From positions 246,397 to 310,396 of IMG/VR virus record IMGVR_UViG_3300046542_000291: DNA of 64,000 nucleotides. The stretch is one strand, 5' to 3'. Below are positions 8,897 through 45,056 of the stretch, piece after piece. Position numbers and translations under genes: made by a program. Under the pieces are notes generated by a model that had not been told where the DNA came from, ran no database searches, and saw nothing but the letters and a program-made list of their open reading frames with translations. Each line of letters starts with the position of its first letter. Position 1 is the stretch's first letter.

Positions 8897-11218
8897 TTAC
8901 TTGGCTACTCGACCAGTCACGCTCAGAACAGCGCGAACCAGATCGATGATGCGTTCCTGGAACAACCCGTAGGTTTCCAAGGAAGCCGAAGTGCACCACC
9001 AGGCTTGAGACATGAGCTCTTCCAAAGCCTTAGTGCCGCGCTTAACTTCAGCAGCTTCACCAGCCTTCTTGTTAGCCATGTCGCTTTCGGTGCCACTGCG
9101 GTTGATGCTGTCGATTGCAGCAACCAACTTCTTGCCCATTACGCTCGAGGTAGCGTTGGACAGACCGACCAGAACCTTACACAGTTGCAGAAGCTTGACC
9201 ACGTCAGCTTTCTTCAGCGAAGCCGAGGAGTGGCCGTTAGGGTTCTCCAGGTAATCGCACTGTGGCATCACCCGCTTACGCAGGGACTTCATGTCAGCAA
9301 CCAGATCACCAGTCGCTTTCAGTTCAGGCTTGACGATTTCGAAGCCGCCTTTGAAGGTCCACACAGACGCAGGGTACTTGGTGTATGGAGCAGCCAGCTT
9401 CAGTGCCTTGTTGGCAGCCGCGGCAGCTTTGGTACCGTCAGGAGCCGAGATACCTTCCTTCACACATGCGATGAGGCTTTCGATGTAAACCGAATCCGCC
9501 TTGAAGACAGAGCTACCCATCTCGGTCAACGCTTTCAGTTCACCAGTGATACCTTTGATCACGCCGTCGTTGAAGTGCAAGACAGCGGGCAGGAGTTTGA
9601 CTTCCAGTTCCGATTCCATCTTCGCTTCGCCGATCTTGGTGATCTGCAGGTCCAGCTTCTTGTTCAGCGCATCGATCTCGGCTTGTGGAGCCTTGAGGTG
9701 CATCTTGTCGTTCATTTTCTTGGCGAACGCATCGACCATGTTCTTACGAGCATGCTTCAGGCGTTTCCAGAACTCACCGAAGGATTCCAAGGAAGCCTTG
9801 TAGTGGTCTTCGATGTTGGCCGCGCTGTAGGATTCCACGGATGGAACCACTGGAGAATGGTTGCCCATTGCTTTGGCCAGGCTCAACATTTTCTCGGTGG
9901 CCAAGGCCATCGTTTGGTTGCTGAACTCTTTGTTACGGATGCCGTAACTCAGAACCCCCATGAAGTGCTCGACTGCGGCGGTTTCTTCGTCGACTTCGTT
10001 GATCGATTTGCTGGTGTCGATGATTTCATCTTCCAGCTTCTCGTCTTCTTCAACCTTGTCGTCCGCAGTGATCTCGGCGTCGGCTACGTCTTCGTCAGTG
10101 GTTTCGGTGTCCACATCGGGTACGTCGATATCGCCGTTTGCCAGATCTTCTTCGGCTTGGGCGTCTTCTTCAGGCGTGGTTTCTTCTTCGCCTTCCGTTT
10201 CACCTTCACCTTCACCCGCGTCTTCGCCGCCTTCGTCACCACCCTCGGCGTCACCAGCTTCTGCATCGCCGCCTGCATCAGCTCCGGCATCGCCATCAGC
10301 TGCATTGGCGTCGTCACCGGTAGCTTCACCGCCACTATCGGCACTTGCATCATCACCACCAAAGTCACCACCGGCATCAGCGCCGGTATCTACATCACCC
10401 GTTGCATCAGCGGCTGCATCGCCATCGGTACCCGCATCTGCGTCAGTACCAGCAGCGGTATCGTCAGCACCGGTATCGGTACCAGCGTCGTCACCGGCCG
10501 CAGCCGAGTCATCACCCGCAACGGCGTCAGCTGCTACATCAGGTTCAGCTTCGCCAGTAGTGCCTTCTGCGCCAGCATCGTCGGATGTACCTGCCGAATC
10601 ACCAGCGTCCCCGCCCACGCTATCGCCACCGCCAAAATCATCACTGCCGCCGTCACCCAGACCGCTATCGCTGCCAGTCCCAGTGTCATCAGCGCCAGAA
10701 GCATCTGCGCCCAGATCACCAGATGCTTCACCACCGGTGTCACCACCCAGATCCGCTCCATCATCGCCACCTTCGGCGCCTGCGCCGTTGTCGGTACCGC
10801 CTTCGGGAATAGCGTCGATGTCACCACCAACTGCTTCCGCATCAGCAGCATCACCTTCAGTAACACCTGCGTCAGCTGCAGCAGGGGCATCACCCTCGGT
10901 CGAACCCGGGGCCACGTCTGCCGTTTCAATAACAGCAGCTTGTTGTTCGGTCACTTGCTGGGCTTGTTGTTCAGCTTGAGCATGTGCCGGATCTTCCTGG
11001 GCTTGAGCAGCTTGCGCTTCGTCAGCCGAGGCAATCAGATCTGGAGCCGATTCAGTCGGAACTTCCATGGAGGTCGGAGCTTGTTCGGTTGGCAGGGCAG
11101 CAGGAACTGCGCCCGCTACTGGTGCTACGGCACCTTCGTTGTGAGCCAGCGGAGCACCAGCAGGTGCCTGGTCGACGTACTCTTCGAACGCAGGCAGATA
11201 CCGTGTAATATTCATCAT
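8897..11218 (-). CDS. internal head (inner-body) protein with a very long acidic propeptide
   Basis: D/E/G/A-rich region over residues 7-387; S/A/G-x-E sites (AFE, SME, SVE, SLE) match phiKZ prohead protease specificity. Confidence 0.75.
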   Translation of the reverse strand: MMNITRYLPAFEEYVDQAPAGAPLAHNEGAVAPVAGAVPAALPTEQAPTSMEVPTESAPDLIASADEAQAAQAQEDPAHAQAEQQAQQVTEQQAAVIETADVAPGSTEGDAPAAADAGVTEGDAADAEAVGGDIDAIPEGGTDNGAGAEGGDDGADLGGDTGGEASGDLGADASGADDTGTGSDSGLGDGGSDDFGGGDSVGGDAGDSAGTSDDAGAEGTTGEAEPDVAADAVAGDDSAAAGDDAGTDTGADDTAAGTDADAGTDGDAAADATGDVDTGADAGGDFGGDDASADSGGEATGDDANAADGDAGADAGGDAEAGDAEGGDEGGEDAGEGEGETEGEEETTPEEDAQAEEDLANGDIDVPDVDTETTDEDVADAEITADDKVEEDEKLEDEIIDTSKSINEVDEETAAVEHFMGVLSYGIRNKEFSNQTMALATEKMLSLAKAMGNHSPVVPSVESYSAANIEDHYKASLESFGEFWKRLKHARKNMVDAFAKKMNDKMHLKAPQAEIDALNKKLDLQITKIGEAKMESELEVKLLPAVLHFNDGVIKGITGELKALTEMGSSVFKADSVYIESLIACVKEGISAPDGTKAAAAANKALKLAAPYTKYPASVWTFKGGFEIVKPELKATGDLVADMKSLRKRVMPQCDYLENPNGHSSASLKKADVVKLLQLCKVLVGLSNATSSVMGKKLVAAIDSINRSGTESDMANKKAGEAAEVKRGTKALEELMSQAWWCTSASLETYGLFQERIIDLVRAVLSVTGRVAK

Positions 11219-38525: not shown

Positions 38526-39137
38526 ATGCAAGACCAAATCGCTGTTGCAACCAACGTCACCCGTACCGAAGAAGGCACCCTCGTCGTGGAACACACTACC
38601 CCTACCATTCAGGAAACTCTGTCTCCAGCAGAAGAGCTGAGCCTCATCACCCCGCTGTCTCCCGAATTCGAAACCCTGTCGATCGAAGACCAGTTCGCCA
38701 TCGCTGTCCAGGAAACCGGCATCGCCGCCGAGACCATGCTGCGTCTGACCGGCTGGGATATCCTGAACGGTTTGTTCAAAGCTTGCGCCAGCGGCCTGAA
38801 CAGTACCCAATTGTTTGTGCTACCCGTCCTGTCCGACTTGCCAAACATCCTGGCTAAGCTGGACGACCCACAGGCATTCGAATCTTCGTTCGACGCCCTG
38901 AAAGACGATATCGCGAACATGGCGCAAGCGCTTCGTATCGCATCGGCACAACACGTAGGTAAAGTCGGTATCCCAGAAGAAGGCGACCTCGAGAAGGTTA
39001 AGCTGCTCTCCCTGGAATACAGCAAAATCCAAACTCAAATCGAAAAGGCTGTACAGCCGCTGATGTTGGCTTTGATTGACACCCTGGAAGAAGCAGGTAT
39101 CAAAGACCTGTCGATCGGCGCTCCTGAACAGGCGTAA
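38526..39137 (+). CDS. hypothetical protein
   Basis: GGAG SD; highly biased codon usage. Confidence 0.7.
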   Translation: MQDQIAVATNVTRTEEGTLVVEHTTPTIQETLSPAEELSLITPLSPEFETLSIEDQFAIAVQETGIAAETMLRLTGWDILNGLFKACASGLNSTQLFVLPVLSDLPNILAKLDDPQAFESSFDALKDDIANMAQALRIASAQHVGKVGIPEEGDLEKVKLLSLEYSKIQTQIEKAVQPLMLALIDTLEEAGIKDLSIGAPEQA

Positions 39138-39149
39138 TGGAGTAACACG

Positions 39150-40892
39150 ATGTCCACTGTAATCCCTGATGATGACCAGTTCGCTGGTGAAACACCTAAT
39201 CCAGATTTGGCTGTTGCCATTGACTGGAACAATGTAGAAGAAGCCCCGACATACGAACTACCGACTGATGATCCTCAGTTCGTTGTTGATGATCGCCCTG
39301 TTGACTGGGACGCGATCAAGGATACACCTGAACTCCTCGAAGCTGCACCAGACAGCCGTACTCCGGCTGAAGTGCGTGGCTTCGAAAATGCACACGAAGT
39401 AGCCGAGCGTCTCGGCGGTGAAGACATCGGTGATGACGATGTCGACCAGGATAAAGAAGAACGCCCGGCGTTCGAACCTCAACAGAAGCGTGTGAACTTC
39501 ACCATCAAGCGTGCAGTGGATGGTCCAGCCATTCCAGCTGCCGCTGCCATCATCACGTTCATGCGTGAAAACCCAGAAACCTTCGAAGCGGTCATCGCTC
39601 ACCACGACGACGACATTGCTTCCATGGAAAACGGCGAGACCGTTACCACGGACAAGGACCTGGAATGGCTGGAACAATTGCGTCTGGCGATTGCCCACGC
39701 TGACATGAACGGTACGCCGCGTCGGGCTACCGAGCGTGAAGGTTCGCATTGGGTTCAATCGATGGAACACGAAGGCCGTTACGTAGGTCCTTCTCGTCCG
39801 AAGATGATCCTGGGTGATAAGCCTACCAAGGTTGAACTGCTGTCCTTCCTGACTCGTAAGTCGGGTATGGGTGCTACCCACGAATTCCCAATGCCGCACA
39901 CCGGTCTGTGGATTCGCATGCGTACGCCTACGAATGCTGAAGTTGTGTCGATGATCCAACGTCTGCAATACGTGGCTGTCCGTCTGGGTCGTGATACCAA
40001 AGGTCAAGGCTTCTCCAACCGTCAAGCTATCTACAACAACGCTCTGACTGACCTGGCTCTGTCGTGCATCACGCACTGCAGCTTCAAGTACAGCACACCG
40101 AGTGATATCGAAGATCGGCTGTCGGCACTGGACGAACCGCTACTGCACCACGGCCTGGCTACTACCATGTACCCAGGTGGCTTCAACTACAAGCACCCAT
40201 GTGTTGCTGACCCAACCAAGTGCAACCACGTTGAAGAAGCTAAGCTGGACATGTTCTCGCTTAGCTGGTACGACAACAGCTCGTTCAACCTGAAGCAGCG
40301 TCAACTGCTCAACGTTCGTTTCAGTCGTGAAGTCTTGGCTTCTGAACTGGCCGCGTACAAAGAGAACTCGGTTATTGGTCGGAGTCCCATCAAGTGGTTC
40401 GATCAGGTTGGTGTGCGCATGCGCGTACCTTCCATCGCTGAACGCCGTGAAGCTGGTCAACAGTGGATCGATGGTGTTGTTGAAATGACCCATGGTGCAT
40501 TCAACGAATCTCCGGGTGATGCCAACCGTGGTTCCTTCATTGACCGTCTGGGTCGTGTGACCAGTGCTCGTCAATACGCTCATTGGATCGACGCCATCTA
40601 CATCAAGGATGGGGACGATGAGTCCGAGAAGTTGCTCACCGAAGACCGTGAGGTTATCGATGAGTACCTGTCGACCATCATGTCCGATGCTCGCTTCGCC
40701 AAAGAGTTCGAGGAAGCGATTCTTCAGTTCATCGACGATAGCATCATCGCCATGGTTGCAATCCCATCCTTCAACTGCCGGGTGTGTTCATCGGAAGCAG
40801 CTCACAAGTTCCACGAGCGTTTCGATCACTTGATCCCACTTGATGTGATGTCGACGTTTTTTACGCTGGCGGGCCAGAAAGTCAACCAATAG
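39150..40892 (+). CDS. conserved protein, T4 gp26-like baseplate hub/tail assembly candidate
   Basis: Acidic N-terminus; two repeats of 'RxRxP(T/S)' plus Cys motifs (HPCVADPTKC, FNCRVC). Confidence 0.55.
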   Translation: MSTVIPDDDQFAGETPNPDLAVAIDWNNVEEAPTYELPTDDPQFVVDDRPVDWDAIKDTPELLEAAPDSRTPAEVRGFENAHEVAERLGGEDIGDDDVDQDKEERPAFEPQQKRVNFTIKRAVDGPAIPAAAAIITFMRENPETFEAVIAHHDDDIASMENGETVTTDKDLEWLEQLRLAIAHADMNGTPRRATEREGSHWVQSMEHEGRYVGPSRPKMILGDKPTKVELLSFLTRKSGMGATHEFPMPHTGLWIRMRTPTNAEVVSMIQRLQYVAVRLGRDTKGQGFSNRQAIYNNALTDLALSCITHCSFKYSTPSDIEDRLSALDEPLLHHGLATTMYPGGFNYKHPCVADPTKCNHVEEAKLDMFSLSWYDNSSFNLKQRQLLNVRFSREVLASELAAYKENSVIGRSPIKWFDQVGVRMRVPSIAERREAGQQWIDGVVEMTHGAFNESPGDANRGSFIDRLGRVTSARQYAHWIDAIYIKDGDDESEKLLTEDREVIDEYLSTIMSDARFAKEFEEAILQFIDDSIIAMVAIPSFNCRVCSSEAAHKFHERFDHLIPLDVMSTFFTLAGQKVNQ

Positions 40893-40915
40893 GTCATACT
40901 AACCATGACCCTAGG

Positions 40916-41383
40916 TTGAGCCGACTGTCCGTCGATCATAGCGACCCATCTGGGCATGCCACACTTTACAGCTTCGGCCGTGACTTGGGCAAGGCGGATG
41001 GGCACGTCATGAGGCTTCGTACAGAAGGTCCTGTCGTAAGACCAGCGATCGCTGAACGACTGCTCAGAACAGCGTATCAAACAGAGTACGGTATCTTCGA
41101 CCATCCTAACCATGGGAACTTCCCATTGGACTGTGTCAAGCTCCATCCGAAAGAAGACTTCATCGAAGGCGGCGCAGTGCGCAGCAACATGAGGAAGTTT
41201 GCACGGCTGGAGGTAGGTGACATCTTCAAAGTGTCCTGGAACGAGTTTAAGGATCTCCCCTTTGACGAAGCCCAGTTCATGTTGGAGTATGCTGAGTCAG
41301 CTTTCAACAGAAAGGCAAGCGACACCGGTACACTGACACGTCAGTTGGAACGAGACATGCGTCAGGCAGGTATCAAACCGTAA
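40916..41383 (+). CDS. conserved hypothetical ORF without a good start; probable -1 frameshift extension of 39150..40892
   Basis: TTG start lacks a spaced SD; the -1 frame is open from 40844 through the slippery site G_TTT_TTT at 40856-40862. Confidence 0.6.
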   Translation: MSRLSVDHSDPSGHATLYSFGRDLGKADGHVMRLRTEGPVVRPAIAERLLRTAYQTEYGIFDHPNHGNFPLDCVKLHPKEDFIEGGAVRSNMRKFARLEVGDIFKVSWNEFKDLPFDEAQFMLEYAESAFNRKASDTGTLTRQLERDMRQAGIKP

Positions 41384-41403
41384 CAAAAAAAATACGTCAT
41401 AAG

Positions 41404-41423
41404 GCCAGCCCCGAAGGGCTGGC
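41404..41423. terminator. bidirectional terminator
   Basis: gccagccc-cgaa-gggctggc flanked by cgtcataa / ttttatgtcg, between convergent genes. Confidence 0.85.
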
Positions 41424-41434
41424 TTTTATGTCGC

Positions 41435-42787: not shown

Positions 42788-43477
42788 CTATAGGTAGAAC
42801 CACTCCTTCCATTGAGGGAGATGGCTTCGAACTCGATGACGGATTACCTGACGCTCAGTGCCATAGGCCTTCGCTGCTTCACGCAATCCATGATAAACAT
42901 TGCCTTCGCAACTAATCTGTTTCTTGAGATGATCCTTTACTTCACTGGCTTTCTGTTTCAAGTCGTCTGGCACTGGACGACCCCGTCGTTTGGCTGCGCC
43001 CTTTTCAATTGACTCCCGACTACGCTTTATACCCATTAAAGCTTGGCTTATTTTAGAGCGGTGTTCAGGGGAACTTTTCGTTCCGGATCGCAATGTCCTT
43101 AGTTTAGCGAGTCTCTCTGGTGACATCTCCTCGGCATTACCGCCACCACCCCTCACATTAGAAGCCACGTTGTTAAGCAAGATTCCCTCAGCCTTGTACT
43201 TATCCGCTAACGCTTGCTCAAGATCGTAGGCGGTTTCTCGGTCGCTAACCTCGTAAACAACAGCGTACCAGTTAGGGCTTTCATCCACTAAACGTTGTAA
43301 CTCGGCAACATGGTGTCGACGATGTTTCAGCATCGATTTATGGACTGCTAAACGGTGCCCAACTTGCGATGAGCTACCCACGTACTTCATTCCGGAATCA
43401 CGATGAGTAATAATGTACGCTCCACAGAAATGTACAGTTGTGAGGAGTGGACCCTCGTATGGAATTAGATCATTCAT
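42788..43477 (-). mobile_element. free-standing GIY-YIG homing endonuclease with NUMOD3/NUMOD1-like DNA-binding repeats (probable start MNDLIP)
   Basis: GAYIITHRDSGMKYVGSS...RLAVH, a catalytic-type LEQ, SPEHRSKISQALMG and GNVYHGLREAAK; GAGGA SD. Confidence 0.85.
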
Positions 43478-43498
43478 TTCATCCTCTGACGACATAAA

Positions 43499-43514
43499 GT
43501 GGCCCGAAGGCCAC
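43499..43514 (-). terminator. terminator hairpin, cUUCGg
   Basis: gtggcc-cgaa-ggccac followed by TTTATGTCG on the minus strand. Confidence 0.7.
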
Positions 43515-43520
43515 CTTAAG

Positions 43521-45056
43521 TTAAGACACACGGCGCACCACGGTTTTGTTGCATTTTCCTTCGAAGTGCTCGCTCTTTCGGTGATGGTACTTCACTTGCT
43601 GGGGGATGTTGATGCAGTACGTGTAGGTGAATCGAGGAGTGATGTCAGGGTACAACTTCAACTTCCTCAAACGCCCAGCGATCTGAATGTTGTCCTTCTT
43701 CGAGTCCGTGCTATGTAGCAGCAAGCACTCACGCAAGTTGGGAATGTCCACCCCGGTACCAGACGACTTCATTGTCGAAACAGTGATGTTGTTCGTCAGG
43801 AGTCTTTCATATGGACATCCCGAGACGTGCTCGTTAATGACCAGGTCTGGAAGATGTTCCTTCAGATACTTCACCAACTGTTGAATGAACACAACCGTCG
43901 CACACAGCGTTAAGCATTTCTGCTCGGGCAGCATGTCATTGACGAATATGCCATTCAAGATCCGAAGCACCATGGTGTTGTAGATTGCCAGGCGCTTCTT
44001 GTTCTTCATCATCTCCGTTTCGTAACGCATGTGGTTATACGTGTTCTTGTACGGAGTGAGGTAATCTTTCGGTGTGACTGTGGGGTCACTGTACATTAAC
44101 GCCATGACGTCGATGTACACGTCGTAGTTCGGGAGACGACACGCGGTGATCGGAGGCAACATCACCTCAATCATTTTGGTCACGTATGCGTTGCCCGTGT
44201 ACGGCGTTGCCGACAGGTAGATCTGTTTTGCCACGTTGGTGTAGATGTCAATCCGGAACACCAACCCAGGGTCTTCCTGGATCTCATCGTTGATCTGCAG
44301 GCCAACCTTCAACACCTCGTGGAAACGCGGTGGTGGAACGTTATAGCCTACGGTGTGGAGATTACCGCCCAGTCGCTCGAAAGCTTCTATATAGCCACGG
44401 TACGTCACCTGAGACATGATGATAACGTCGATCCCATCAAGATCGTCATTCATGCCTCGATCAATCAACTTCTGCAGTTCAGCCGAACCAGAGCAGGTCA
44501 TGAAACGACCGTAGATGTCTTCGTAGACATCCTGCAACGCCTCTTCCCAGATACCGAAGTACTTAGGTGGAACCATCACGAGCGTTCGACAACTTAATCC
44601 AGGATCAGCAGCAGACGCCAGAGATGTCAGCGTCTTACCTTTACCAGTTTGCAAGTCCACCCGAGCAGAACGAACCAGAGGTCTCAGGATATCTTCTTTA
44701 ATGATTTCCTGATAGTCATGCAGCGTGAACTTCTCTTTGACCCTGAACAGTGCTGGCTTTGCAGCAGGTACCGCAATGTCTGTGACTTCGATGTATTCCT
44801 TCGAGATACCGTTGTTCGCCAGATGGTTAACCAACGCATCATAGCAGTTCCGGTGAATGAACACCTGTCGGTGGTCATCCGTAATCCCGTAGTACTTCTT
44901 CTTAAGTTCCATGATCATTCGACCACGTTCCTTACGGGGTTCCTTCAACATTAAAGTTTCTAGGTACCCTTGCATCTTGTACAGTGTGTCGCGGTTGTAA
45001 CCAGATAGTCTTACGCCATGCGAATAACGCTCTGCTTTTATTAACGGTTGAACCAT
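43521..45056 (-). CDS. SF2 (RAD25/UvsW-like) helicase (phiKZ gp75-like)
   Basis: LQTGKGKT (Walker A), DEIQ, LSATP, GTGVDIPNL and QIAGRLR. Confidence 0.9.
   Translation of the reverse strand: MVQPLIKAERYSHGVRLSGYNRDTLYKMQGYLETLMLKEPRKERGRMIMELKKKYYGITDDHRQVFIHRNCYDALVNHLANNGISKEYIEVTDIAVPAAKPALFRVKEKFTLHDYQEIIKEDILRPLVRSARVDLQTGKGKTLTSLASAADPGLSCRTLVMVPPKYFGIWEEALQDVYEDIYGRFMTCSGSAELQKLIDRGMNDDLDGIDVIIMSQVTYRGYIEAFERLGGNLHTVGYNVPPPRFHEVLKVGLQINDEIQEDPGLVFRIDIYTNVAKQIYLSATPYTGNAYVTKMIEVMLPPITACRLPNYDVYIDVMALMYSDPTVTPKDYLTPYKNTYNHMRYETEMMKNKKRLAIYNTMVLRILNGIFVNDMLPEQKCLTLCATVVFIQQLVKYLKEHLPDLVINEHVSGCPYERLLTNNITVSTMKSSGTGVDIPNLRECLLLHSTDSKKDNIQIAGRLRKLKLYPDITPRFTYTYCINIPQQVKYHHRKSEHFEGKCNKTVVRRVS

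What the first reader, a model, noticed from the sequence alone, without database searches (positions are those of the whole stretch)
40844..41383. Probable programmed -1 ribosomal frameshift (G_TTT_TTT) fusing ORF 39150 to ORF 40916
Seen: ORF 40916 is in the -1 frame relative to 39150 and has only a TTG with no properly spaced SD. That frame has a stop at 40841-40843 and is then open from 40844, through ACG TTT TTT ACG at 40854-40865, nine sense codons before the 0-frame stop, and on to 41383. A shift would give a ~744-aa fusion alongside the 580-aa product. A weak CTGG-CGGG-CCAG hairpin follows the site. Known: tail-assembly chaperone pairs (lambda G/GT, P2 E/E+E') use -1 shifts near the end of the first gene, with U-rich sites in myophages. 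The downstream ORF carries SWNEFKDLPFDE, reminiscent of chaperone extension domains. Inference: this is a jumbo-phage equivalent of the chaperone/hub frameshift pair.
Basis: partly seen in the sequence, partly recalled or inferred. Interest (0 to 1): 0.75.

Follow-up and report, generated by a model that had tools for sequence, protein, structure and literature searches.

The report
Conserved -1 frameshift in jumbo-phage gene
A run of six T's near the end of a 580-codon gene of a phiKZ-like jumbo phage most likely makes some ribosomes slip back one base and add a 173-residue tail to the protein, and the same arrangement is present, unannotated, in all 36 distinct related phage loci examined, in a gene that appears related to the T4 gp26 baseplate-hub assembly chaperone.

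Summary
ORF 39150-40892 (580 aa) carries ACG TTT TTT ACG at 40854-40865. The -1 frame is closed by TGA at 40841-40843 and then open to 41383. A shift would give a 744-aa product.

The recoding reading is strongly supported by comparison. In 36 of 36 distinct orthologous loci (phiKZ, PhiPA3, 201phi2-1, Goslar, SPN3US, PCH45, RP12, Ea35-70 and others, plus IMG/VR contigs):
- one T5-T8 run sits in phase (TTT TTY) 25-133 nt before the stop;
- the downstream ORF is always in the -1 frame and open across the run;
- no start codon is conserved. phiKZ has none for 255 nt after the run.

No in-frame fusion appears among the 150 best of 245 homologue clusters. The window's ORF uses TTC for all 24 other Phe codons.

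The locus is not a lambda G/GT-type chaperone. It is not in a tail module and the protein is four to six times larger.

Ribosomal slippage versus RNA-polymerase stuttering is not resolved. No paper describing this was found in the library searched. I class it as a new member of a known kind.

The parts
39150..40892 (+). 0-frame ORF, 580 aa. Orthologue of phiKZ gp77, PhiPA3 gp074, 201phi2-1 gp136 and Goslar gp081 (phrog_4585). Residues 1-101 are predicted disordered. The core at about 105-580 has two repeated modules, each ending in a Cys pair (C351/C358, C543/C546). Probable distant relative of T4 gp26 (PF12322).
40856..40862 (+). Slippery heptamer G_TTT_TTT (T6 run at 40857-40862), in phase as two 0-frame Phe codons. 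Relatives have T_TTT_TTT or T_TTT_TTC (22 of 36), G_ or A_TTT_TTT (13 of 36), or T5 (1 of 36).
40863..40892 (+). Dual-coding overlap: nine 0-frame sense codons plus TAG. The same bases encode the -1 peptide AGGPESQPI, which is conserved. The bases are almost invariant among Pseudomonas-phage relatives.
40844..41383 (+). -1 frame ORF (phrog_12109; phiKZ gp76.4, PhiPA3 gp073, 201phi2-1 gp135). The part read after the shift is 40862-41380 (173 aa) plus the TAA stop.
40893..41008 (+). Linker of the extension. It is non-coding in frame 0. It evolves with a third-position excess in the -1 frame (456 against 227 and 155), as the domain does. Its length and sequence vary between genera.
41009..41380 (+). 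Conserved helical C-terminal domain of the extension, about 125 aa. It contains the motifs RTAYQTEYGIFDH, HPKED and SWNEFKDLPFDE and ends in a long helix. No known fold or family. The assembly's own gene call (P0021) starts here, at ATG 41009.
41404..41429 (.). Terminator-like hairpin GCCAGCCC-CGAA-GGGCTGGC followed by TTTTAT and preceded by A8 (41385-41392). It lies between the convergent + and - strand genes and closes the gp78-like/gp77-like operon.
   Evidence: read directly. It was not listed by the consensus scan.
38526..39137 (+). Upstream gene of the same operon (phiKZ gp78-like, phrog_14050). It always directly precedes the frameshift gene in relatives.

Best explanation
The gene at 39150-40892 makes two proteins from one start codon.

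Most ribosomes read through TTT TTT and stop at TAG 40890, giving the 580-aa protein. A fraction slip back one base while the two tRNA-Phe occupy G_TTT_TTT (40856-62). They continue in the -1 frame with TAC and finish at 41383. That gives a 744-aa isoform in which a flexible linker and a roughly 125-aa helical domain replace the last nine residues.

No conserved RNA structure or upstream Shine-Dalgarno-like element was found, so the U-run itself appears to be the main determinant, as reported for P2 E/E+E'.

The protein is probably the chimallivirus counterpart of the T4 gp26 baseplate-hub assembly chaperone. By analogy with G/GT, the long isoform would tether the chaperone body to a second partner during tail or baseplate assembly.

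What is shown and what is inferred:
- Shown: the sequence architecture and its conservation.
- Inferred: that the shift is ribosomal, its efficiency, the gp26-like role, and what the extension binds.
For: 1. Conservation of the architecture. In 18 named chimalliviruses from 10 host genera and 24 IMG/VR loci (36 distinct sequences), there is one T5-T8 run in phase 25-133 nt before the 0-frame stop. The downstream ORF is always -1 and open from 6-140 nt before the run for 154-178 codons after it. The -1 frame inside the gene body carries 9.5 stops per 100 codons.
2. Homology upstream of any start. tblastn similarity of the -1 translation begins at query residues 1-5 in phiKZ, PhiPA3, 201phi2-1 and others. 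The peptide FFY.GGPES is conserved.
3. No conserved start codon. The first ATG/GTG/TTG after the run is at +255 nt in phiKZ, +204 in Ea35-70, +154 in CR5 and +153 in PCH45, inside or beyond the conserved domain. Gene callers place the start anywhere from query residue 2 to 89.
4. Codon choice. Elsewhere in these ORFs Phe is TTT in 32% of cases. At the site, codon 1 is TTT in 35 of 36 and codon 2 in 32 of 36. The window uses TTC 24 times and TTT never elsewhere.
5. The linker after the 0-frame stop evolves as coding sequence in the -1 frame.
6. None of the best 150 of 245 homologue clusters is an in-frame fusion. The 20 upstream-protein homologues are 536-580 aa. The two-frame layout is therefore maintained, as expected if both isoforms are needed.
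7. Contigs from four independent phiKZ RNA-seq studies carry the genomic T7 with no indel.
8. Function. BFVD Foldseek hits to T4-like 'baseplate hub assembly protein/hub subunit' entries have E 3e-5 to 1e-3 and TM by target 0.5-0.57. PF12322 matches one family member at 24.7 bits against a cut-off of 24.5. In the ESM Atlas, 86 of 100 named feature hits are PF12322 clusters and the structural TM is 0.59. Both families have two Cys pairs and FF near the C-terminus. T4 gp26 is listed as a hub assembly chaperone in PMC3004832.
9. Precedent. P2 E/E+E' shifts at TTTTTTG without a downstream structure (PMC3091744).
Against: - No direct evidence of the 744-aa product (no proteomics or Ribo-seq was available).
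- The window's heptamer has G, not T, at position 1, so P-site re-pairing is imperfect.
- No stimulatory RNA structure is conserved: consensus energy -0.55 kcal/mol, 4 pairs.
- In the window and its nearest clade a start-type codon (TTG or ATG) lies 24 nt after the 0-frame stop, so separate initiation is not excluded for this clade alone.
- The run length reaches T8 in some phages, more than ribosomal slippage needs.
- The gp26 link is weak by sequence. The window protein itself has no Pfam hit and hhalign of the two family profiles is not significant.
- The predicted body-extension complex gave no answer.
Confidence: 0.7

Rival explanations
1. Transcriptional slippage. The phage (or host) RNA polymerase stutters on the template A-run and adds one U (or drops two) in a fraction of transcripts. 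Ordinary translation of those mRNAs then yields the same 744-aa fusion.
For: The signal is a pure homopolymer whose length reaches T7-T8 in most relatives, longer than a heptamer needs. No RNA stimulator is conserved. Chimalliviruses use unusual multisubunit RNA polymerases whose slippage behaviour is unknown (own knowledge).
Against: Thirteen of 36 loci, the window included, have only T6, and one has T5. That is short for known polymerase slippage sites (own knowledge). RNA-seq contigs of four phiKZ studies show only the genomic T7, but contigs hide rare variants, so this excludes only a majority-level effect.
Confidence: 0.15
2. Two separate genes. The downstream ORF is made on its own, from TTG 40916 or ATG 41009 or by termination-reinitiation after TAG 40890. 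The T-run is conserved only because the protein needs Phe-Phe there.
For: All GenBank records examined annotate two CDSs. The window and the D6 clade share a start-type codon at the same aligned position 24 nt after the stop. 201phi2-1 and RP12 have start codons overlapping the stop. The -1 relation is also what an ATGA or TAATG overlap gives.
Against: - phiKZ has no start codon for 255 nt after the run, and Ea35-70 none for 204 nt. Their free products would lack half of the conserved domain.
- Homology and coding-type substitution extend upstream of every candidate start.
- Phe-Phe alone does not explain TTT TTT in a gene that otherwise uses only TTC.
- Candidate starts lack Shine-Dalgarno sequences.
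- -1 frame stops lie just upstream of the run in 8 of 18 phages but never between the run and the domain.
Confidence: 0.1
3. Artefact or decay: a homopolymer-length error in the metagenome assembly, or a recent frameshift mutation in one gene that is really continuous.
For: Homopolymers are error-prone, and the window is a metagenome-assembled contig.
Against: 36 independent assemblies with different run lengths all give the -1 layout. No continuous version exists among the best 150 homologue clusters. Four further phiKZ data sets reproduce T7. The 0-frame tail after the run is itself conserved (TLAGQKVNQ).
Confidence: 0.01

Closest known systems
Phage P2 E / E+E' (tail assembly chaperone pair, -1 shift at TTTTTTG)
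   Same: Myophage. A U-run slippery site close to the 3' end of the first ORF. Two products share the N-terminus. No downstream RNA structure (PMC3091744).
   Different: P2 E is 91 aa and lies between the tube and tape-measure genes. Here the body is 580 aa, the neighbours are a gp78-like gene, a head-protein-like gene, an RNA polymerase subunit and a helicase, and no sequence or fold match to GpE was confirmed.
Phage lambda G / GT (G_GGA_AAG)
   Same: Same logic: a minor C-terminally extended isoform whose extra domain is thought to bring a second partner to the chaperone (own knowledge; Xu, Hendrix and Duda 2004, cited in PMC9024508).
   Different: Different heptamer, size, genomic position and fold. 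Only weak structural echoes of the chaperone fold were seen: 3klu Z 4.8, 2ob9 Z 4.0, 3fgx Z 3.6, all below the tool's noise guide.
T4 gp26 / gp26' (PF12322, gp26-family baseplate hub assembly chaperone)
   Same: Probable distant homologue of the body. Both have two Cys pairs and an FF motif near the C-terminus. The T4 gene also yields two nested products (annotation). gp26 is listed as a hub assembly chaperone (PMC3004832).
   Different: T4 gp26 is 208 aa. Its second product comes from an internal in-frame start and shares the C-terminus, not the N-terminus. T4 has TTC TTT, not a T-run, at the corresponding place, and no extension.

Membership tests
Programmed -1 ribosomal frameshift site (X_XXY_YYZ type) | Slippery heptamer in the correct phase of the 0 frame | tested here: met
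   The window has G_TTT_TTT, with the A-site and two of three P-site pairs kept. 22 of 36 relatives have the canonical T_TTT_TTT or T_TTT_TTC.
Programmed -1 ribosomal frameshift site (X_XXY_YYZ type) | -1 frame open across the site and leading into a conserved coding region that has no start of its own | tested here: met
   Met in 36 of 36 loci. phiKZ has no start codon for 255 nt. The linker shows coding-type substitution.
Programmed -1 ribosomal frameshift site (X_XXY_YYZ type) | Site conserved at synonymous positions in orthologues | tested here: met
   TTT at codon 1 in 35 of 36 loci against 32% TTT elsewhere in the ORFs. The window has 0 TTT among its 24 other Phe codons.
Programmed -1 ribosomal frameshift site (X_XXY_YYZ type) | Stimulatory element (downstream hairpin or pseudoknot, or upstream Shine-Dalgarno-like sequence). 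Common but not obligatory. | tested here: not met
   No conserved structure: RNAalifold gives 4 pairs at -0.55 kcal/mol. Per-sequence z-scores are mixed. No consistent upstream Shine-Dalgarno-like sequence.
Programmed -1 ribosomal frameshift site (X_XXY_YYZ type) | Trans-frame protein made by ribosomes from unedited mRNA | not testable with these tools
   Only RNA-seq contigs were available. They show the unedited T7 as the consensus. There were no proteomic or ribosome-profiling data.
Tail assembly chaperone pair (lambda G/GT, P2 E/E+E') | Gene pair lies between the major tail/tube gene and the tape-measure gene | tested here: not met
   The neighbours are the gp78-like and gp79-like genes, a virion RNA polymerase beta-type subunit, a homing endonuclease and a helicase.
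Tail assembly chaperone pair (lambda G/GT, P2 E/E+E') | Small (about 90-150 aa) first product with the chaperone fold or family | tested here: not met
   580 aa, with no Pfam tail-assembly-chaperone family. Only sub-threshold structural hits to 3klu, 2ob9 and 3fgx.
Tail assembly chaperone pair (lambda G/GT, P2 E/E+E') | Two products with a common N-terminus by a -1 shift near the end of the first ORF | tested here: met
   Met at the level of sequence architecture.
Tail assembly chaperone pair (lambda G/GT, P2 E/E+E') | Not a component of the finished virion | tested here: inconclusive
   201phi2-1 gp135 and gp136 lack the 'identified using mass spectrometry' note that neighbouring gp138 carries. 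The terms gp81 and gp82 do not occur in the Goslar virion-structure paper; that the paper's numbering matches the locus tags was not checked. Absence from lists is weak evidence.
T4 gp26 family (PF12322 T4_baseplate, baseplate hub assembly chaperone) | Match to the Pfam model above its gathering score | tested here: inconclusive
   The window protein has no hit. One relative (L035) scores 24.7 bits against a cut-off of 24.5, over profile positions 107-213. Profile-profile comparison is not significant.
T4 gp26 family (PF12322 T4_baseplate, baseplate hub assembly chaperone) | Shared fold | tested here: met
   BFVD Foldseek gives about ten T4-like hub assembly or hub subunit entries at E 3e-5 to 2.4e-3, probability 1.00, TM by target 0.5-0.57. 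ESM Atlas structure TM is 0.59, and 86 of 100 named feature hits are PF12322 clusters.
T4 gp26 family (PF12322 T4_baseplate, baseplate hub assembly chaperone) | Two conserved Cys pairs (putative metal site) | tested here: met
   C351/C358 and C543/C546 are invariant in A4. C82/C84 and C187/C190 are invariant in the gp26 family alignment A7.
T4 gp26 family (PF12322 T4_baseplate, baseplate hub assembly chaperone) | Required for baseplate hub assembly | not testable with these tools
   Needs genetics or in-vitro assembly.

The most novel reading that the evidence does not exclude
A recoding event is a fixed, family-wide feature of a core gene of the nucleus-forming jumbo phages (Chimalliviridae), and every genome record examined here annotates it as two genes. 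It would show that the gp26-type baseplate-hub chaperone lineage uses the same short-isoform/long-isoform logic as the lambda G/GT and P2 E/E+E' tail chaperones. That would link two chaperone classes so far treated separately. It would also assign a function to two 'hypothetical' genes (phiKZ gp77 and gp76.4 and their orthologues), with a new helical extension domain as the tether.
Probability: 0.5. Interest if true: 0.7.

Novelty: new member of a known kind. Interest (0 to 1): 0.62.

Why it matters
1. Annotation. It would correct the annotation of a conserved gene pair in phiKZ, PhiPA3, 201phi2-1, Goslar, SPN3US, PCH45 and more than 200 other sequenced jumbo phages. The downstream ORF is currently given arbitrary starts, and in phiKZ it is truncated to 80 aa.
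2. Function. It gives a first functional handle, as a candidate baseplate-hub assembly chaperone with two isoforms, on a core gene of a phage family that is studied intensively for its nucleus-like compartment and considered for therapy.
3. Recoding biology. It supplies a simple, structure-free U-run recoding site conserved over very deep divergence (about 20% protein identity). Such a site is useful for studying frameshifting in Pseudomonas and enterobacterial hosts, and for asking whether the unusual phage RNA polymerases stutter.

Tried and rejected
- Tail-chaperone (G/GT, GpE) membership. No Pfam, PHROG-function or PDB sequence match for either part. The GpE cluster seen in the ESM Atlas (score 0.83) is at chance level and was not confirmed.
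- PDB fold searches. Foldseek found nothing for either model. The wide VIA-align search gave only Z below 5.2.
- Downstream stimulatory RNA. Single-sequence folds gave mixed z-scores. A long-range stem is predicted in the window/D6 clade and in phiKZ, but there is no covariation and almost no consensus structure.
- Transcript editing. Only contigs were on offer for the phiKZ RNA runs. No indel was seen at the run, which is uninformative for minor species. The window's own phage is known only from a rhizosphere metagenome DNA run.
- Body-extension docking. Complex prediction gave no answer, score 0.06.
- Profile-profile comparison of the gp77-like and gp26 families was not significant.
- The search for related loci with the two wide alignments failed for lack of a conserved stretch. 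A five-sequence alignment worked.
- A T4 gp26-to-gp25 frameshift was considered. T4 has TTC TTT there, not a slippery run.
- Other T6 runs in the window were checked as possible further sites. The one at 11218 is the 5' leader of a minus-strand gene, and none of the others lies in two overlapping sense frames.
- Literature. Eight searches and several full-text look-ups found no report of this frameshift. The library lacks most subscription journals.
Full report
**What the window is**

The window is bases 246397-310396 of a 310,396-bp virus contig with direct terminal repeats, assembled from a rhizosphere metagenome. The nearest isolates are Pseudomonas phages RVTF4 (67.5% protein identity for the gene in question), D6 and Psa21. 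It is a phiKZ-like, nucleus-forming jumbo phage (Chimalliviridae).

**The observation**

- ORF 39150-40892 is frame 0.
- The -1 frame has TGA at 40841-40843 and is then open to TAA at 41381-41383.
- ACG TTT TTT ACG lies at 40854-40865, with the two TTT as in-phase Phe codons.
- Nine sense codons follow before TAG.
- A shift would join 571 residues of the first frame to 173 of the second, giving 744 aa.
- TTG 40916 has no spaced Shine-Dalgarno sequence.

T6 runs are avoided in this window: 16 matches against 35 +/- 5.8 in shuffles. None of the other runs lies inside two overlapping sense frames.

**Which genes these are**

The upstream ORF is the orthologue of phiKZ gp77, PhiPA3 gp074, 201phi2-1 gp136 and Goslar gp081 (phrog_4585). 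The downstream ORF corresponds to phiKZ gp76.4, PhiPA3 gp073 and 201phi2-1 gp135 (phrog_12109).

The conserved neighbourhood is:
- a gp78-like gene directly upstream;
- a gp79-like gene and a virion RNA-polymerase subunit on the other strand;
- small ORFs, here including a homing endonuclease;
- a helicase downstream.

This is not a tail module. A hairpin terminator at 41404-41429 closes the operon (read).

**The comparative test**

I fetched the locus from 17 named phages on ten host genera: Pseudomonas, Escherichia, Salmonella, Serratia, Erwinia, Ralstonia, Xanthomonas, Vibrio, Klebsiella and Cronobacter. I also fetched it from 24 IMG/VR contigs. After removing duplicates there are 36 distinct sequences, whose proteins are as little as 18-25% identical to the window's.

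In all 36:
- the upstream ORF contains exactly one T-run of five or more in its last 220 nt;
- the run ends in phase as TTT TTT or TTT TTC, 25-133 nt before the stop;
- the downstream ORF is in the -1 frame;
- that frame is open across the run, from 6-140 nt before it to 154-178 codons after it.

Elsewhere in the gene body the -1 frame has 9.5 stops per 100 codons. In eight of the 18 loci (17 named phages plus the window) a -1 stop lies within 17 nt upstream of the run. No stop ever lies between the run and the conserved domain.

The heptamer is the canonical T_TTT_TTT or T_TTT_TTC in 22 loci. It is G_ or A_TTT_TTT in 13, the window included. It is reduced to T5 in Vibrio phage pVa-21.

**Evidence that the overlap and linker are translated**

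- tblastn similarity of the -1 translation starts at query residues 1-5 in nearly all relatives, upstream of any start codon.
- The peptide FFY.GGPES is conserved.
- There is no conserved start. The first ATG/GTG/TTG after the run is at +255 nt in phiKZ, +204 in Ea35-70, +154 in CR5 and +153 in PCH45. A free product would therefore lose much of the conserved domain.
- Gene callers place the start anywhere between residues 2 and 89 of my query. The phiKZ record annotates only the last 80 codons.
- Among the window's close relatives, the stretch between the 0-frame stop and ATG 41009 changes mostly at -1-frame third positions (456 against 227 and 155). The downstream domain shows the same pattern (1641 against 705 and 498).

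**Evidence that the T-run is selected as such**

Away from the site, Phe is TTT in 32% of cases in these ORFs. At the site the first codon is TTT in 35 of 36 loci and the second in 32 of 36. The window's ORF uses TTC for all its other 24 Phe codons.

The two-frame layout is also maintained rather than resolved.
- An exhaustive HMMER search of 1.84 billion representatives with the downstream piece found 245 clusters. The best 150 are all 92-180 aa, with no in-frame fusion.
- The 20 homologues of the upstream protein, the window's own included, are 536-580 aa.

An assembly error is excluded by the number of independent assemblies, and by four phiKZ RNA-seq data sets whose contigs reproduce T7.

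**Mechanism**

No stimulatory element is conserved.
- Downstream folds have mixed z-scores.
- The consensus structure of 16 Pseudomonas-phage sequences has four pairs at -0.55 kcal/mol.
- The strong base conservation for about 25 nt after the run is explained by dual coding.

This matches P2 E/E+E', which shifts at TTTTTTG without a downstream structure (PMC3091744).

I could not separate ribosomal slippage from polymerase stuttering. The RNA runs were available only as contigs, which hide minor variants. I favour the ribosome because 14 of 36 loci have only T5-T6. Known polymerase slippage usually needs longer runs (own knowledge).

**What the protein is**

AlphaFold2 models are good. The body has mean pLDDT 78.6, with residues 1-101 disordered. 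The extension has mean pLDDT 85.6: a disordered linker, then a helical domain ending in a long helix.

Neither model matches a solved structure convincingly. Against predicted viral structures, the body first matches its own family. It then matches about ten entries named baseplate hub assembly protein or hub subunit of T4-like phages, at E 3e-5 to 2.4e-3 and TM by target 0.5-0.57.

Further evidence points the same way:
- T4 gp26 is PF12322 (8.8e-64), and one gp77-like relative reaches that model's gathering score (24.7 against 24.5 bits).
- In the ESM Atlas, 86 of 100 named feature hits are PF12322 clusters and a PF12322 cluster aligns at TM 0.59.
- Both families have two invariant Cys pairs and an FF motif near the C-terminus.

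Against this, profile-profile comparison is not significant and the window protein has no Pfam hit of its own. I therefore rate the gp26 relationship as probable, not established.

gp26 is listed as a hub assembly chaperone (PMC3004832). The T4 record annotates a second, internally initiated product, 26'. The extension domain has no recognisable relative outside this family. A predicted complex of body and extension gave no answer.

The lambda G/GT equivalence fails on position and size, but the broader 'chaperone/hub' idea gains support from the gp26 link. The remark that SWNEFKDLPFDE resembles chaperone extension domains has no support. That motif is simply the most conserved part of a domain of unknown fold.

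**Novelty**

Eight full-text searches and several look-ups found no mention of a frameshift in this gene. The look-ups included the 2025 review of nucleus-forming phages, the core-genome paper, the Goslar virion structure and a PCH45 transposon screen. The library lacks most subscription journals, so an earlier report cannot be excluded.

Programmed -1 shifts in phage tail-assembly genes are a well-known kind. This is a new member in an unexpected gene family and genomic place, conserved across a whole virus family.

Noticed in passing
window 42788-43531 (- strand): A 247-aa ORF matches homing-endonuclease families (phrog_314, 7.9e-24). It overlaps the start of the helicase gene 43521-45056. 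phiKZ, PhiPA3, 201phi2-1 and D6 have only small ORFs at this place, so it may be a mobile insertion.
   Followed up: partly
L043:3803-4429 (T4 gene 26, - strand): The T4 record annotates two products of gene 26: gp26 (208 aa) and an internal in-frame 26' (95 aa). A gp26-type gene therefore also makes nested isoforms in T4, but they share the C-terminus. T4 has TTC TTT, not a slippery run, at the place that corresponds to the chimallivirus site.
   Followed up: partly
window 39150-39452 (residues 1-101 of the 580-aa protein): The N-terminal 100 or so residues are predicted disordered (pLDDT below 50). They are longer than in relatives (533-556 aa), and most homologues align only from about residue 105.
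   Followed up: no
window 39840-40892 (residues about 230-580): The model and the alignments suggest an internal duplication. There are two modules, each with a beta-hairpin, two long helices and further elements, and each ending in a Cys pair (C351/C358 and C543/C546). hhalign placed gp26 residues 100-191 on the first module, while Pfam placed gp26 positions 107-213 on the second.
   Followed up: partly
L011:2621-2625 (Vibrio phage pVa-21): This is the only relative with a T5 run (GTA CTT TTT ACG). A shift there could involve only the P-site tRNA-Phe. It would be a natural test of how much of the run is needed.
   Followed up: no
window 41385-41429: An A8 run, then an 8-bp GC-rich hairpin, then TTTTAT, lying between convergent genes. 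It looks like a bidirectional intrinsic terminator, but the consensus scan did not list it.
   Followed up: no
whole window: T6/A6 runs are less than half as frequent as in dinucleotide-preserving shuffles (16 against 35 +/- 5.8). This suggests general avoidance of homopolymers in this genome.
   Followed up: no
L001:2768-3010 (phiKZ gp76.4) and equivalents: Public annotations of the downstream ORF are inconsistent: 80 aa in phiKZ, 134 aa in PhiPA3, 153 aa in 201phi2-1, 109 aa in Goslar and 124 aa in the window's own gene call. All would need revision if the frameshift is real.
   Followed up: yes
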